A stretch of DNA of 64,000 nucleotides, from NCBI GenBank assembly GCA_964057225.1, contig OZ059897.1, forward strand, positions 6,944,001 through 7,008,000, written 5' to 3'. The position numbers were made by a program, and so were the translations under genes. Below are positions 10,658-17,721 of the stretch, piece by piece. Each line of letters begins with the position of its first letter. Position 1 is the first letter of the stretch. The DNA is from Auanema rhodensis (lineage: Eukaryota > Animalia > Nematoda). Under the pieces are notes generated by a model. The model was given only the letters and a program-made list of their open reading frames with translations. It made no database searches and was not told the origin of the DNA.

Positions 10658-13600
10658 ATGACTTCCACGTTGGTTGAGACTGTAAATATTAATTTTGATG
10701 ACTTTTCTGAAAACTTTTTAACTTGCTCAACTTGTCTTCATCTTTTTGATCAGGTCAGTTTTATCGGTTTTCCTTTTTGTTTATTGAAGTGTGAAATGGA
10801 ATTTATTATGTTATTCAGGACAAACGTAAAGCCAAACTCTTGCCATGTTCTCATTCCGTTTGTCAATCCTGCCTCCAGCAAATTGTGTGTTTACCTCCCG
10901 TAAGTTTTAACTCTACTTTCTTGGAGCTATTTACATTGCTTTGTTAATTTTCGAGAAATAATCTTTCTGCTCTATTCACGTCGTTTCATGTGAATATGCG
11001 ATTTCATTTCTATTCGAAATATGTTGCAGTTGCTTTCTACATCCCTCTAAAATTTAATATTTTTTTTCTACATATGTATATCAATAGATATACCAGATGA
11101 AGTATAGCGTTAAAAGAGAGAATAACTTTTTATTTACTTCTTTCTCTTTTCTGCTTTGTGTGTATAGATACAGCACACCGTTTACTTTTTTTCATTTTGT
11201 AAAGCATTTAAAATTTTGATGAAAGAAAAATATTCTGATTCACGTTTATACTGTTTTTTCATAGAAAATTCATTACTTTTACAGAATGATGGACTGACTG
11301 TACGCTGTCCTATGTGCCGAGACGACTGTATGCTACCAAGTGGAGGTGTAAGCGGCTTACCCCCAGCTTTCTTAATAAATCAGTTGTTAGATGTCATGCA
11401 GGTTTGTTGAAATATAACTCATATTATCGTTAAGTTTGATCTATTCAGAGACAAAGGAAGGAATTTGTGCCTTCTTGTTCCAATCATCCCTCGGAACAGT
11501 TATTATATTGCGAATATTGTGATTTTGTTTTCTGTCATCATTGCCATTCATCTGTCATTAAGTTGGTTACTAGCATGTCACTTTTCCAAATACTTTGTTT
11601 TCAGTAAAAAGTGTACTCAACATGCTGTCATACCATTATCTATAGCTCTAAAGCGAATGTCCGAAATCGTCATATATCGAGCAAAGGTTTTTTTTCTCAA
11701 TTTAATTTATGTTATAATAAAAGTGATTACTAAACAAAAAAATAATTTCTGTTATTAAAAATTAAAGAGAAACAGAAATTTGTGTTTTAGTTTGTTCCGA
11801 TTCTTCTTAAGAGCTAACTTCTTCAATATTTTTCACGTTTTCTATTTGAATTTCACCCGAAAAGTATTTTATTTCATTTTCCTCCAGCTCGTCTTTCGAT
11901 AATTTGAAAAATTCATCAATTAAATACAAGAGAATTAATTTAAATACATGTTTTAAGGGACGTCTGCGTGCCTTGGATCTGGCTCGTGTTACTGTTGATG
12001 AAGAAATAACTCTATTAGACCAAAATGTTGATAAAATAGTTGATCAAATCAACGCCACCTTCCAGGTACTTTCTAATTTTTGAATCAAAATCTTGTAAAG
12101 AGAAAGAAACTATTGAATTGAATAGGATTATTATTTGAAAAACAATAGCGAGGAAGACGAGTGCGAAGTCTGAAAAGATGATCAGCATTCGATTTTCTGC
12201 TGTGAACATTGACAGGAATGCGTATGTCTCTCCACAGCGTTTTCGATATTGAACGTCTGAATCAGATTTTGTATTGAGGACTTTCGATCTGCTTCTCAAA
12301 CGTAAACATAGCGTACGAGCTTGTTTCTCATGTACTTTCCACTCGTTTTCTTTGAATTTCCTCCTTGTGATGTTTTTCTCTCAAAATATTTCAAAAAACG
12401 TACTTCATTTGATAAGTCTAGTTTATTGCGCAAATTTCCAATAGAATTAAAAAGCTATGACATTGATAAGAATTTCAGCGTATCGACAGTTGTCGAATTT
12501 TAAATACAATTTTTCATATATCATTAATAGTTTCAATATTATATATTTTTTTACAGGAAGTTTCTAATATTGTTGAAATTCGACGACGGGAATTGATAGA
12601 AAACGTCAGAGTCACCAGGGATAAGAAGAGGAAAGTACTGAAGGATCAAATAGAAATGATCGCGGATGAAAAGAAAAAACTGGCAAAGGTATGTTTTTGT
12701 TATTTGGCTCTATTACTATATGTACATACGAGGTGATGTGCCTGTGATTTTGTAACATTTTCAATATTTATTGGAGTATATACACAAAAAATGTTGACTC
12801 AGCTGAAGCTTGCAGGAATTGGACAATTGCCAGGTAGACGTGCGTACTATGGGCAGACAACTACGATCTTTTGATAGTAACAGCGACCTCCAGTTGTGCC
12901 AACCACGGGAAAACGCATTTTTACGCTTAAATACTACTTCTAGTCAACTTCTTTGTGGTTAGTTTACATTGAAAAAGTTGCTATGATCGTAACTCTTATT
13001 GCAGATATTCAGCAGTGTGTATCAAATTTTGGAACAATTACTGCTTCTACCACCTTCCCCGGTGAATCTACTATTGATCAAGTTGAACACTGCTCAATAA
13101 ATACAGAATGTAAGCTGTTAGTTAGGTGAGTAGTACTATTCTCTTTCTACCTTCTATCAATTTTGATACATATTTCAATACTTTGTTATATGAGTGATGA
13201 TTTTCTTATTCGTCAATTTTAAGAAGCCTTATCTTTCTATTAATGTTATCAAGTACAATACTCATTCATGTTTTATAGAACCTGTGACGTTAATGGCAAA
13301 GCTCGGACCAGTGGAGGTGACCCTCTAGATGTTTCTTTGAAGTCGAAATCAGGCCAGGACATTGGTGCTACTGTTCATGATATGAATGATGGCACATATG
13401 AATTATCATTTAGGTTGGATATTATTCTATTCTTCTCATATATATTCATTTATAGAGTTCAAGAACCTGGAACTTATACAGCTACAGTCAACATATTCGG
13501 AAGGCCTATTAAGGATAGTCCATTACAATTAACTGTTTCTTCTCGGCATAAAGCAAAGTAAATCATCTGATAAACTTATTAAATTGTTTAAATCGATATT

Positions 13601-14613
13601 GTTCAGATGGCAACTTGAAGCTGAATTATTACAACCAACGAGAATGTCTACGTTAGATGACGTATTTTACGTTCTTGACACTGGTCATTGTAGGAGTAAG
13701 ATCGTCTTGTATTTTTTTAATCTGCTGCAATTTGACTATTCAGTTCGAATGTTCAAAGATAATGGAGCGATAATAGGTGAAATCAAATCAAAATGCCTCG
13801 AAGGAAATTCTGCGGTTGGCATGGTGGTTCTGAGTTCATCTGAAATTGTCGTTTTAAATTGGAAAACGAAAACAATAACCAAAATAACTACTAAAGGGGA
13901 AGAATTACAGGTACTTGTGTTACAGATGTTTCTGAATACTCCATTTCTTATTAGGCTGTAACGTTTTCGGAGTTTCAAGAGCCTATAGACTTAGCATTGG
14001 ATAGGAGAGGAAGATTCATTATTGCAGATAAAAACAAGGTATTTAATATACATATAAATAGTGATTTCAACTAATATTCTTGTAGGTTTTCGTATTTGAT
14101 CCTTCTCTTCGTCCTCTCTTCAGTTTCCCCGCGAAGGGTTTAAGAATATCAGGTGTAAAAGCTGGATTGGATGATGACATTTTAGTGTCAACAACAACGG
14201 GCTTACTTTTATATGATGGGACTGGCAAATTTTTAAGAGAAATAGAGCTTGGTCCTAAGAATCACAGGTTTGGTTTCCGCATTCCCTTTGGTTTTTAATT
14301 GATGTTTTTTTCAGAGGGAAATTGATGTCTACATCTTGCTCAGTATGTCCATCGACTGGTTTAATAATCTCAGGAACTTTAGATATGAAAACTAATAAAA
14401 CATACCTAGCGGTAAGTGTAATAACCTGAGGAATAACTTAGTTTTCATTTTCAGACATGCAGTTACAAAGGCTTATTCCAATTTTGGATAGATACATGTG
14501 ATACCCCACTAAGAAGTCCAAGTTGTATTACTATTGGCAGTGGGAAGTTTCAAGGAATGTGTTTTGTGATAGACCATATCACAAACTCCTTAAAGTTGTA
14601 TAGGTATAAATAA
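10658..14613 (+). CDS. nhl-3: TRIM-NHL protein (RING, B-box, coiled coil, filamin repeat, NHL-like propeller), TRIM2/3 / nhl-3-like
   Basis: RING: TLVETVNINFDDFSENFLTCSTC...KPKLLPCSHSVCQSC...VRCPMCR. B-box: CSNHPSEQLLYCEYCDFVFCHHC. Filamin: DVNGKARTSGGDPL...HDMNDGTYELSF...GRPIKDSP. NHL-like: FQEPIDLALDRRGRFIIAD. Stop TAA 14611-14613. The frame is open a few codons upstream of the ATG, so a further 5' exon is possible. Confidence 0.85.
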
Positions 14614-14853
14614 TACGAATATTTTTTTATTGTTTTTTCTTATTGTTATACTTATCGGGTTATAAAACAACCTCTTCTGTATGTATTAGATTTTTCGAAG
14701 TTTAACACTCCCCGTGGTCAGGCTCCAGTGTTCATAATATGTAAAAACAATTCATGCAAAATAAAACATTATCAAAACAATCAAGTAGCATTATGACTTA
14801 AGAAGTTAAAAACTGGAAAGGGCAAATAAATAGAAGACATTACCAGAAGTAAA

Positions 14854-15725
14854 TTACAACTCGGCTTTACCACCAGTGGCTTTATTTTTGTAATGGTTAA
14901 AGGTACCAGTTACGTATACAGTGATTTGATGAAGGAATGCCTGAGTGTACGAGTAGAAGAGCTGTCCCAAAGCTACTGGTTCACCGCTGGCAAGAGCGCC
15001 GGTGGTGGCCCACAATCCAGAGACAGGCATAAGTCCTCGACCTAAATGAAATAGGTCAAACAGATTTTTCATCGAATTTAATACCATAACAGGCTAAGTA
15101 GGTGTCATCAGCGAAGGAATATATGTAAGAATCAAACTGTCCATGACGGAAATTGCCACCTTAAAACACAACAAAATGAAAATAGTTTGGGTCAACGATT
15201 ACAAACCAGAGCTAAAAGCTTCCTTATTAGCGATGCTAGCAGAGTCAATATGACGCTTCACTGATCCAGATAAAACGGTGCATGTGCTGTTACTCCAATG
15301 TAATCCTACGATAAAGGTAAAAGAAAACAAATAAATGTAAAAATTGAACCTGCTCTCCCGCTAGTAGCAAAAGGAGTACTAAGGACAGCAGCATACTCAG
15401 TTAAAGAAGCGTGTAAAATCAAAGTCTGAAGGCTCAATCCACCAAGAGTTAGAGAATTCCAAGGCTGGTCGGGTACAATAAACTTAGGATAAGTTCTTCT
15501 CAATTCATTAGTAAAACGGTTAACAGCTGTAGTGGGATTGGAATCTAAATAGAAAGATAAACAAAAATATAATTTTACCAAGGAACCTTGAGATTTCGAA
15601 GCGATATTTCTGAACTCTTTGGGAGAAATGTTGTACGACTTCCAACGAAGAAGAAATTGTACTCCTGAGAACAGGATGTAAAGAATTACGAGATTTCGCA
15701 TAATTTTCGAAAAAAAGAATCCCAT
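14854..15725 (-). CDS. Sigma-1 receptor / ERG2 family membrane protein
   Basis: N-terminal TM helix; LILHASLTEYAAVLSTPF..GRAGLHWSNSTCTVLSG and TYLACYGRGLMP align with human SIGMAR1 LLHASLSEYVLLFGT..GHSGRYWAEISDTIISG and TWMVEYGRGVIP. Confidence 0.88.
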
Positions 15726-16126: not shown

Positions 16127-17721
16127 ATGCCTCTTGATTATTCAAGGTGGGATCATATCGATATCTCTGATGATGAGGATGACACCCATCCAAACATCGA
16201 TACTCCATCATTGTTCAGGTGAGGAATCTAACTTTACGATAACTAAGGTGGACACAAATAATAATTATTTAGATGGAGACATCAAGCTCGTCTAGAACGT
16301 ATGGCTGAGAACAAGCAACAGCAAGATGAGATTGAATCAAACAAGAAACAGCAGGAAGATAAAATTTCCGTAAGCTCTTTTCTCCTGTATCCGCTTTCTA
16401 ATTATTGTATTACTTCAGATACTCACTAAGCAACTGGAAAGTACTGAAATAAGTGAAGATGAGAAGAAGAAAATTGAATTAGAAATTGCTGAAGTTAAGA
16501 AGCAGGAGGCTGAATGGAGAGAGAAAGAGAAGGCTTTGGAGGTATCGTAATAGTTTTATAAATTGATTTACTCTCTGTAATTTGAAGGATAAGTTACGCA
16601 CCGAACCATGGAATATCGACACCATTGGGCACGAAGCTTTCAGTTCCTCAAGAATCAACAAATATGCTGAGAAAAAAGCTGAGCCTGTTAAGGTTGATGA
16701 AGAAGAGGATTCCAAAAAAATGGTATCACATTTACATAATATTTTTTCATTTTCTTTATTTTTATAGTCTGACTTCTTTGATAAGTATGAAAGTCAACTT
16801 AAAGCTTTTGGTTCTATTAGCAACATTGAGGCTACTCGTGAGTATTTATTGGAACACCCTCATCTTGCTAACGATTATTCCGCTAGTTTTATTACAATTG
16901 AAGCACTTAATCATGCCATTGTCGAGGAGGTTAATTTTTCCATATTCCGCCAAATAGAAATGTATATATATATTTCTTTTCAGGAGGAACAGTTGGTAAA
17001 CCTTTCGAAGCAATGTATAATTATTCAGTACATAATAGAGCTTGCCAAGAGTCTTAAGGCTAAAGCTGATCATCCTAATATGATTAGAGCATTCTTCACC
17101 AAGTATGTATAGTTTTGTAATGCGTTATATTATCTTGGTCATAGATTTGAAAAAGCTGATCCTTCTTATATGAAGTTGTATCAAGAAGAAGTTCTGGCCT
17201 TCCAAGATAGATTAAGAAAGAGAGCTAAAGTAAAGAGAGATGAAGCATTCAAGCAAGAAGAAGAAGAGAACAAGGTATCATTTAGTTGTTTGTATTATCT
17301 TTAAAATACACATTGTTTCAGTCAGAGAGAATTCGTGAGTCTCCTGGTGGACTTGATCCCTACGAGGTTTTTGAGTCATTGCCAGTAGAAATGCGTGATG
17401 CCTTTGAGAGCAGGGATATCTCAAGACTTCAGAATTTAGCTACATCTATGGATAAAGAAGTAAGATCAATTCAAATTTAATTTAGTTTATGCTTATCCAG
17501 GTTTTCGCTTATCATCTTGACCGTTGTATAAAATCCGGATTATGGGTTCCTGGAGGAGAAGATAAGGAAAGCGATAAAGAGAATGATGAGGCTTCTGAAG
17601 ATTTTGAAAATCCCCCACCTGCCCGAAGCCGTGATGCCAACGAGGTATTATCATTATGATAATGAAAATTCAATTCTTATTTTAGGAAGTACCTGATGGT
17701 AGCGAATTGTCTTCACCATAA
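16127..17721 (+). CDS. cdc-37: Hsp90 kinase co-chaperone Cdc37
   Basis: [41 protein letters not shown]; [19 protein letters not shown]; [13 protein letters not shown]; [10 protein letters not shown]. Confidence 0.96.

What the first reader, a model, noticed from the sequence alone, without database searches (positions are those of the whole stretch)
15089..15282. Sigma-1 receptor homolog has Cys at both ligand-binding acidic positions (D126 and E172): possible disulfide-locked pocket
Seen: GLHWSNSTCTVLSG (Cys codon 15280-15282) and TYLACYGRG (Cys codon 15089-15091) align without gaps to human GRYWAEISDTIISG and TWMVEYGRG, so D126 and E172 are each replaced by Cys. Known: in human SIGMAR1, E172 salt-bridges the cationic ligand amine and D126 hydrogen-bonds to E172, so the two positions are adjacent inside the cupin barrel. 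Inference: the paired substitution could form an intrabarrel disulfide or metal/redox site. The protein would then not bind classical sigma ligands or perform ERG2-type isomerisation in the usual way, and might be a neutral-lipid/sterol-binding or redox-switched variant in a sterol auxotroph.
Basis: partly seen in the sequence, partly recalled or inferred. Interest (0 to 1): 0.72.

Follow-up and report, generated by a model that had tools for sequence, protein, structure and literature searches.

The report
Nematode sigma-1 homolog with cysteine-pair pocket
This expressed worm gene is the nematode counterpart of the sigma-1 receptor/ERG2 sterol isomerase, and, as in every nematode examined, the two acidic residues that hold drugs in the human receptor are replaced by a facing pair of cysteines, so worms probably lack a classical sigma-1 drug site.

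Summary
A five-exon minus-strand gene (14854-15725) is expressed and spliced exactly as modelled. It encodes a 231-aa ERG2/Sigma1R-family protein. Its only two cysteines (codons 15280-15282 and 15089-15091) fall on the D126 and E172 columns of the solved receptors.

The trait is not special to this genome. All 65 nematode homologs from the word-index search that cover both sites are Cys/Cys, and the profile search added Trichinella, Trichuris and Romanomermis. C. elegans W08F4.3 is among them. On a tree the 67 full-length C/C sequences form one branch (support 98), which implies a single origin. No C/E or D/C form was found, and the named non-nematodes have other residues.

Published structures place 126 and 172 opposite each other on neighbouring strands β5 and β10, in a domain reported to be luminal. 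A cross-strand disulfide, or a thiol/disulfide switch, that removes the amine-binding anionic site is therefore my preferred reading (about 50%). I could not measure the S-S distance because the fold tool returns no coordinates.

Rivals are a thiol acid/base pair in the unassigned nematode sterol 8(14)-isomerase, or a metal site. I found no paper noting the substitution. It undercuts attributing sigma-1 agonist effects in worms to W08F4.3.

The parts
15587..15725 (-). CDS exon 1 (ATG 15725-15723). Encodes the short N-terminal tail and the transmembrane helix. Ends in phase 1.
   Evidence: Translation. Tiles the N-termini of the orthologs. The RNA contig joint at 15544/15587 removes 42 nt.
15350..15544 (-). 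CDS exon 2. Holds the core ERG2_Sigma1R match, including HASLTEY (the E102 and Y103 columns).
   Evidence: Pfam PF04622, 30.6 bits against a cut-off of 21. PDB match to 5HK1 and 7W2B.
15207..15305 (-). CDS exon 3. Encodes strand β5 with N-S-T-C.
   Evidence: Translation. RNA joints remove 44 nt and 47 nt on its two sides.
15280..15282 (-). Cys codon TGC at the D126 column
15283..15291 (-). N-S-T sequon directly before the first Cys. The Asn lies on the E123 column.
   Evidence: N-x-[ST]-C is present in 53 of 53 near-full-length nematode orthologs. The Asn is invariant in 67 of 67.
15253..15255 (-). Arg codon on the Q135 column, conserved in nematodes only
   Evidence: 97% Arg in the C/C group against Q or T in the D/E group. 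The column assignment comes from the HMMER alignment.
15085..15159 (-). CDS exon 4. Encodes GNFRHGQF and strand β10 up to A-C-Y.
   Evidence: Translation. RNA joints remove 47 nt and 43 nt on its two sides.
15089..15091 (-). Cys codon TGT at the E172 column
14854..15041 (-). CDS exon 5 with the stop codon (14856-14854). Encodes the C-terminal helices and ends in K-A-E-L (14857-14868).
   Evidence: Translation. [KR]-x-E-L ends 48 of 67 C/C sequences, -EL ends 57 of 67, and the motif is absent outside Chromadorea.

Best explanation
The gene is the single-copy nematode representative of the sigma-1 receptor/ERG2 family, the counterpart of C. elegans W08F4.3. It encodes an ER membrane protein with one N-terminal helix and a cupin-like barrel. 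On the nematode stem lineage both pocket carboxylates (D126 and E172) were replaced by cysteines, and this state has been kept without exception since (shown). The two residues lie directly opposite each other on the neighbouring antiparallel strands β5 and β10, three steps from the backbone-bonded 123:175 pair, which makes theirs a non-hydrogen-bonded register (inferred from published structures plus my alignment). The domain is luminal in the mammalian receptor, so the pair most likely forms a cross-strand disulfide, or a thiol/disulfide switch. That bond would replace the D126-E172 hydrogen bond, staple β5 to β10 and remove the anionic anchor for cationic amines (inferred). The barrel would then still take neutral sterols or steroids but not classical sigma ligands (inferred).
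For: Gene model and expression: RNA contigs from four samples remove exactly the four predicted introns with no mismatch. Family: Pfam PF04622. The AF2 model of the closest ortholog has pLDDT 95.2 and matches 7W2B and 5HK1 at TM 0.88-0.90. Column identity: HMMER alignment to the solved receptors. Conservation: 65 of 65 nematode homologs are C/C. The profile search adds Trichinella, Trichuris and Romanomermis. Both columns are 100% Cys where only 15 of 216 columns reach 97% or more. C/C forms one branch with support 98 and needs one change. Cys never occurs unpaired. 42 of 53 orthologs, and the window's protein, have only these two Cys. [quoted passage not shown] In the model both Cys lie mid-strand. 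Cross-strand disulfides are a recognised metastable, redox-active class (PMC4354306). Ligands: E172 and D126 are essential for amine ligands (PMC10094450). Progesterone binding is unaffected by E169A (PMC11224282). Topology hints: the invariant N-x-S/T before Cys1 and the chromadorean C-terminal K-x-E-L.
Against: No S-S distance could be measured, because the fold tool returns no coordinates. The register of the pair is inferred, not seen. The orientation of sigma-1 in the membrane has been disputed, and it has never been tested for a nematode protein. In a cytosolic domain the pair would stay reduced. K-x-E-L is missing in Dorylaimia, and its -3 position is atypical for a KDEL signal. Strict conservation of two thiols fits a catalytic pair equally well. 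The AF2 model is of an Auanema ortholog about 70% identical, not of the window's own protein.
Confidence: 0.5

Rival explanations
1. The two cysteines stay reduced and act as a thiol/thiolate acid-base pair for a sterol double-bond shift. The protein would be the unassigned nematode sterol 8(14)-isomerase, an ERG2-type enzyme with its carboxylate chemistry swapped for thiol chemistry.
For: The family includes the fungal C8 sterol isomerase ERG2. Zhou et al. predict a nematode sterol 8(9)-to-8(14) isomerase with no assigned gene, and list W08F4.3 (ERG2/Sigma1-like) among the candidate sterol genes in their supplement (PMC6997595). Invariance of both Cys over the whole phylum suits catalytic residues. 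The gene is retained under constraint in sterol auxotrophs (PMC2478713). Thiol-mediated allylic proton shifts are known from IPP isomerase and the two-Cys racemases (my own knowledge).
Against: Fungal-type members keep the Glu at the 172 column and have acidic residues at columns 123/124; the nematode proteins have none of these. Two directly opposed cross-strand Cys in a probably oxidising compartment would tend to oxidise. No enzymatic data exist.
Confidence: 0.25
2. The Cys pair, perhaps with the neighbouring His, binds a metal ion (for example Cu(I) or Zn) or another redox cofactor inside the cupin barrel.
For: Apart from sigma-1 receptors, the nearest folds are metal-binding cupins such as KdgF, ergothioneine dioxygenase and YubC. 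A His aligned to H154 sits nearby in most chromadorean sequences.
Against: Only the two Cys are invariant. The H154-column residue is Q in several chromadoreans and L, F or S in Dorylaimia. The sequon x-position (column 124) is variable. Two ligands are too few for a structural zinc site.
Confidence: 0.07
3. The nematode protein is not the ortholog of canonical SIGMAR1. It descends from an older non-acidic 'sigma-1-like' paralog shared with tunicates, and its pocket had already lost both carboxylates before Cys appeared.
For: In the maximum-likelihood tree, the sister of the C/C clade is a group that is hydrophobic at both columns (Ciona V/V, Styela I/V and unnamed sequences), with SH-aLRT 91.
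Against: Nematodes and tunicates are both fast-evolving, and several of these rows have very long branches, so long-branch attraction is likely. The group is tiny: the search found only Ciona intestinalis, Ciona savignyi and one unnamed sequence. The tardigrade member is D/E. The window's genome has only one family member.
Confidence: 0.15

Closest known systems
Vertebrate sigma-1 receptor (SIGMAR1; structures 5HK1, 6DK1, 7W2B, 8W4B)
   Same: Same Pfam family. Same length and architecture: an N-terminal helix, a cupin-like barrel and two C-terminal helices. The model of the ortholog superposes at TM 0.88-0.90 and rmsd about 1.7 Å. The E102, Y103, G-R-G and many Gly columns are conserved.
   Different: Both ligand-anchoring carboxylates (D126, E172) are Cys. 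E123 is Asn in an N-x-S/T sequon. Q135 and V153 are invariant Arg. Chromadorean members end in K-x-E-L. Sequence identity is only 21-24%.
Fungal ERG2 C8 sterol isomerase
   Same: Same Pfam family and fold class. Both are linked to sterol metabolism. W08F4.3 has been called the ERG2 ortholog (PMC2478713) and a candidate sterol isomerase gene (PMC6997595 supplement).
   Different: The fungal-type sequences in my sample are F at column 126 and E at column 172, with D-D at columns 123/124. The nematode proteins have C, C and N-x there. Nematodes make no sterols de novo.
C. elegans W08F4.3 and other nematode 'Sigma non-opioid intracellular receptor 1' entries
   Same: Same clade, same Cys pair, same sequon, same gene neighbourhood with cdc-37 (the C. 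elegans synteny is my own knowledge).
   Different: None that matters. The window's gene is one more member of this clade. Its closest database relative is from Auanema sp. JU1783, at 63-87% identity per exon.
Cross-strand disulfides at non-H-bonded sites of antiparallel sheets (aCSDn; for example CD4 domain 2)
   Same: Two Cys directly opposite each other on adjacent antiparallel strands. This class is described as metastable and suited to redox switching (PMC4354306).
   Different: Here the disulfide is only inferred. It would lie inside a ligand pocket rather than on a surface sheet.
Tunicate 'sigma-1 receptor-like' proteins (Ciona, Styela)
   Same: Both pocket carboxylates were lost together, and the N-x-S sequon before column 126 is kept.
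   Different: The replacements are V/V or I/V, not Cys/Cys. These proteins have longer C-terminal extensions.

Membership tests
ERG2_Sigma1R (Pfam PF04622) | Score above the Pfam gathering threshold | tested here: met
   Exon 2 alone scores 30.6 bits and the exon 1-2 read-through 40.2 bits, against a cut-off of 21.
ERG2_Sigma1R (Pfam PF04622) | N-terminal transmembrane helix, cupin-like β-barrel and two C-terminal helices | tested here: met
   AF2 model of the closest full-length ortholog P0001: pLDDT 95.2, helix 2-20, ten strands, helices 166-179 and 183-217. TM 0.88-0.90 to 7W2B and 5HK1. The window's five exons align colinearly to P0001.
Sigma-1 receptor in the pharmacological sense | Glu at position 172 that salt-bridges the ligand amine | tested here: not met
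   Cys (TGT 15091-15089).
Sigma-1 receptor in the pharmacological sense | Asp at position 126 hydrogen-bonded to E172 | tested here: not met
   Cys (TGC 15282-15280).
Sigma-1 receptor in the pharmacological sense | High-affinity binding of (+)-pentazocine, haloperidol and similar ligands | not testable with these tools
   Needs a radioligand assay.
Fungal-type ERG2 sterol C8 isomerase | Glu kept at the 172 column and acidic residues at columns 123/124, as in the F/E group | tested here: not met
   The nematode proteins have C at 172 and N-x at 123/124. The fungal-type rows have E and D-D.
Fungal-type ERG2 sterol C8 isomerase | Sterol Δ8-Δ7 isomerase activity, or complementation of erg2 | not testable with these tools
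   Needs an enzyme or yeast assay.
Cross-strand disulfide (aCSDn) | Two Cys directly opposite on adjacent antiparallel strands, in the non-H-bonded register | tested here: inconclusive
   Both Cys lie mid-strand in the model. The β5/β10 adjacency and the 123:175 backbone H-bonds come from PMC10094450. The register of 126:172 follows by counting and was not seen directly.
Cross-strand disulfide (aCSDn) | S-S distance of about 2.0-2.1 Å in a structure, or the oxidised state in vivo | not testable with these tools
   Structure prediction returns no coordinates, and there is no biochemical data.

The most novel reading that the evidence does not exclude
Nematodes turned the sigma-1/ERG2 pocket into a redox-gated pocket of inverted polarity. 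A reversible cross-strand disulfide between β5 and β10 (the strands that simulations say must part to open the barrel) replaces the anionic D126/E172 pair. An invariant Arg at the Q135 column makes the distal 'polar zone' cationic. The protein would then bind or isomerise neutral or anionic sterol derivatives (8(14)-sterols, sterol sulfates or dafachronic-acid-type carboxylates) under control of ER redox state.
Probability: 0.12. Interest if true: 0.8.

Novelty: new variant of a known kind. Interest (0 to 1): 0.5.

Why it matters
E172 is routinely called highly conserved and essential in sigma-1 receptors. Here a whole animal phylum, including the model C. elegans and major human and livestock parasites, has an ortholog without it and without D126.

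There are three consequences.

1. Sigma-1 agonist effects reported in worms (for example ANAVEX2-73, PMC6468724) cannot be assumed to act through W08F4.3. That paper names the gene but reports no test of dependence on it.

2. The nematode protein is a natural experiment on what the sigma-1/ERG2 barrel does without its amine site. It is also a concrete candidate for the unassigned nematode sterol 8(14)-isomerase.

3. A phylum-specific, invariant Cys pair inside a lipid pocket is a distinctive handle for chemical probes, and for telling worm from host protein.

If the disulfide is real, it would be a natural staple across the β5/β10 seam that simulations implicate in opening the pocket.

Tried and rejected
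1. Measuring the S-S distance.

2. The top Foldseek hit, 7W2H ('double cysteine variant'), looked like a precedent. Its engineered pair is C179/C203 on helices α4/α5, not the pocket positions (PMC8913746), so I rejected it as a precedent.

3. A second family member with canonical D/E in the same genome. Both the Pfam and the profile searches of the 181-Mb assembly hit only this locus.

4. A conserved post-TM sequon (Y-N-I-S) as a topology marker. It occurs in only 6 of 53 orthologs, so I dropped it.

5. A Cys2-His metal site. The His column is not conserved in Dorylaimia or in several chromadoreans.

6. Breadth of the hydrophobic-pocket group. The last word-index search found only two Ciona proteins and one unnamed sequence, so the paralogy question stays open.

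A search for strand geometry returned reviews only.

8. The spliced 231-aa protein of the window has no reference, so it was never joined for any search or fold.

Full report
**What is in the window**

The finding lies in a minus-strand gene with short introns of the nematode type. I derived five exons from GT..AG sites and reading frame:
- exon 1: 15725-15587
- exon 2: 15544-15350
- exon 3: 15305-15207
- exon 4: 15159-15085
- exon 5: 15041-14854

All introns are in phase 1. The coding sequence is 696 nt, giving 231 aa plus the stop codon. The exon translations tile four full-length nematode proteins end to end (alignment A1).

Contigs from four samples of one study each cover 14700-15716 with no mismatch. 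They skip exactly 43, 47, 44 and 42 nt at my intron positions, with CT..AC ends on the plus strand. The runs are probably RNA; they hold 55% of the sampled words, about the exon share of the stretch. The gene is therefore expressed and spliced as modelled.

Exons were searched one by one by reference.

**The observation**

- Exon 2 alone passes the Pfam ERG2_Sigma1R threshold, with 30.6 bits against a cut-off of 21.
- HMMER aligns the ortholog to the solved Xenopus and human receptors. The first Cys falls on the Asp of ISDTI(L/I)SG and the second on the Glu of WMVEYGRG, with no gap near either site.
- The window's protein has exactly two cysteines, and these are the two.

**How general it is**

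A profile search of the word index returned 67 nematode family members. Of these, 65 cover both sites and all 65 are Cys/Cys. They include C. elegans W08F4.3, Pristionchus, strongylids, ascarids, Strongyloides, tylenchids and Plectus.

An exhaustive profile search of 1.84 billion representatives found 324 family members, of which the best 150 were listed. A column tally over those rows plus the earlier hits gave:

| State (column 126 / column 172) | Rows |
|---|---|
| C/C | 81 |
| D/E | 39 |
| F/E (fungal ERG2 type) | 9 |
| hydrophobic/hydrophobic | 8 |
| scattered singletons | a few |
| C/E or D/C | 0 |

Source names show that the most divergent C/C sequences are Trichinella, Trichuris and Romanomermis. 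The pair therefore spans both nematode classes. The named non-nematodes differ:
- tardigrade and gastropods: D/E
- soft coral (Xenia): H/E
- nemertean (Tubulanus): K/S
- leech (Helobdella): D/S
- Ciona: V/V
- Styela: I/V

On a maximum-likelihood tree of 124 sequences, the 67 C/C rows are one side of a branch (SH-aLRT 98) and need a single change. Within nematodes only 15 of 216 columns are 97% conserved or better. Both Cys columns are at 100%. 42 of 53 near-full-length orthologs contain no other cysteine.

The window's 181-Mb genome has only this one family locus.

So the trait is an ancient, strictly maintained nematode character, not a feature of this gene alone. What is seen is joint invariance after one origin, not repeated covariation.

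**Structure**

An AlphaFold2 model of P0001, built with a 121-sequence alignment, has mean pLDDT 95.2 and pTM 0.90. It places Cys112 in strand 108-116 and Cys160 in strand 156-164. Foldseek matches it to Xenopus and human sigma-1 receptor structures at TM 0.88-0.90 and rmsd about 1.7 Å; ordinary cupins follow far behind.

Published work supplies the geometry (PMC10094450; strand assignments also in PMC11224282):
- D126 lies on β5 and E172 on β10.
- The two strands are neighbours.
- E123 and R175 share backbone hydrogen bonds and a salt bridge.
- D126 hydrogen-bonds E172.

The residue numbers of both contacts add to 298, as expected for an antiparallel ladder. By my inference, 126:172 is a directly opposed pair three steps from a hydrogen-bonded pair, which puts it in the non-hydrogen-bonded register. 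That is the register in which cross-strand disulfides occur. Such disulfides are described as metastable and redox-active (PMC4354306).

**Compartment**

The mammalian receptor is reported to be a type II protein with its barrel in the ER lumen (PMC10094450). Two nematode features fit this reading, although neither proves it:
- An N-x-S/T sequon lies immediately before the first Cys. The Asn is on the outward-facing E123 column and is invariant in 67 of 67 sequences.
- A C-terminal [KR]-x-E-L ends 48 of 67 C/C sequences, and -EL ends 57 of 67. It is absent in Dorylaimia and in every non-nematode group.

**Mechanism I favour**

I put about 50% on a disulfide or a thiol/disulfide switch. The Cys pair would replace the D126-E172 carboxyl pair with a cross-strand disulfide that ties β5 to β10 and removes the anionic anchor for cationic amines.

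Shown: the substitutions, their invariance, the fold, expression of the gene, and its single-copy status.

Inferred: the register of the pair, the oxidised state, and the ligand consequences.

The loss of classical ligand binding is well grounded, because both residues are essential for amine ligands (PMC10094450). Neutral steroid binding could persist, because progesterone binds the Xenopus receptor without touching E169, and E169A leaves its Kd unchanged (PMC11224282).

**Rivals**

1. A reduced thiol/thiolate pair catalysing a sterol double-bond shift. Zhou et al. predict an unassigned nematode sterol 8(9)-to-8(14) isomerase and list W08F4.3 among the candidate genes in their supplement (PMC6997595). 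Against this, fungal-type members keep the Glu at column 172 and have acidic residues at 123/124, which nematodes lack.
2. A metal site. Only the two Cys are invariant, and the H154-column His is not.
3. Descent from an older non-acidic paralog shared with tunicates. The tree places the hydrophobic group as sister with support 91. Both lineages are fast-evolving, several of those branches are very long, and the group is tiny. I therefore regard long-branch attraction as more likely, and the point as unresolved.

**Comparison with what is known**

The protein is a member of Pfam ERG2_Sigma1R by score and by fold. It fails the two residue criteria that define a sigma-1 receptor pharmacologically. 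It also lacks the acidic residues kept by fungal ERG2-type sequences.

The gene family member itself is known and is automatically named 'Sigma non-opioid intracellular receptor 1'. PMC2478713 called W08F4.3 the ERG2/OPRS1 ortholog. Only three papers in the searchable library mention W08F4.3 in their text, and I found no mention of the Cys replacement. PMC6468724 attributes the ANAVEX2-73 effects in worms to sigma-1 activation and names W08F4.3 as the ortholog. It mentions the gene only once, and the passages I retrieved show no test of dependence on it.

I therefore class this as a new variant of a known kind: real, phylum-wide, apparently unreported, and of moderate interest. The scan's notes hold no earlier finding on this gene or family.

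Noticed in passing
window 15253-15255 and 15146-15148 (minus strand): Two Arg residues are invariant or nearly so in nematodes only. One lies on the Q135 column, which lines the distal 'polar zone' of the barrel in Xenopus structures. The other lies on the V153 column, next to H154. Together with the loss of D126 and E172 this shifts the pocket region by about +4 charges. That fits the unusually high pI (9.39) reported for W08F4.3 in PMC2478713.
   Followed up: partly
window 14857-14868 (minus strand): The protein ends in K-A-E-L. A C-terminal [KR]-x-E-L resembling an ER-retrieval signal ends 48 of 67 C/C sequences. All of these appear to be chromadorean. The motif is absent in Trichinella, Trichuris and Romanomermis and in all non-nematode family members sampled.
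   Followed up: partly
window 15283-15291 (minus strand): The N-x-S/T sequon directly before the first pocket Cys is universal in nematodes. It also occurs before the Asp in a few invertebrate D/E members (gastropod, tardigrade) and in the tunicate V/V proteins, but not in vertebrates, which have E123. Whether it is glycosylated is unknown.
   Followed up: partly
P0005, P0006, P0010, P0013, P0015 (public proteins of Ancylostoma duodenale, Ancylostoma ceylanicum, Trichostrongylus and Ostertagia): These database proteins carry insertions exactly at C-Y-G|R-G, which is the position of intron 4 in the window's gene. P0013 has another insertion near the position of intron 3. They look like retained-intron gene-model errors, and they show that the intron position is conserved.
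   Followed up: no
window 16127-16219 (+): The divergent neighbour starts with a CDC37 N-terminal kinase-binding domain (Pfam E 5.7e-10). This is the same cdc-37 neighbourhood as C. elegans W08F4.3/W08F4.8 (my own knowledge), and it agrees with the scan's note on a cdc-37 gene nearby.
   Followed up: partly
window about 11216-14600 (+): A convergent downstream gene has RING-like, B-box and filamin-repeat exons, of the TRIM-NHL type. The RNA contigs that cover the sigma-1-like gene run on about 2.1 kb into it, so the 3' ends of the two genes abut or overlap in unstranded assemblies.
   Followed up: partly
window 15716-15725 (minus strand): All four RNA contigs stop at 15716, 9 nt short of the ATG and within a T-run. 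The 5' end, and any trans-splicing at the TTTTCAG acceptor about 16 nt upstream of the ATG, could not be seen. The Auanema database protein starts at the second Met.
   Followed up: no
P0104, P0095, P0234 (Ciona intestinalis, Styela clava, Ciona savignyi): The tunicate 'sigma-1 receptor-like' proteins have lost both pocket carboxylates as well, but to Val or Ile. This is a second lineage in which the two positions changed together.
   Followed up: partly
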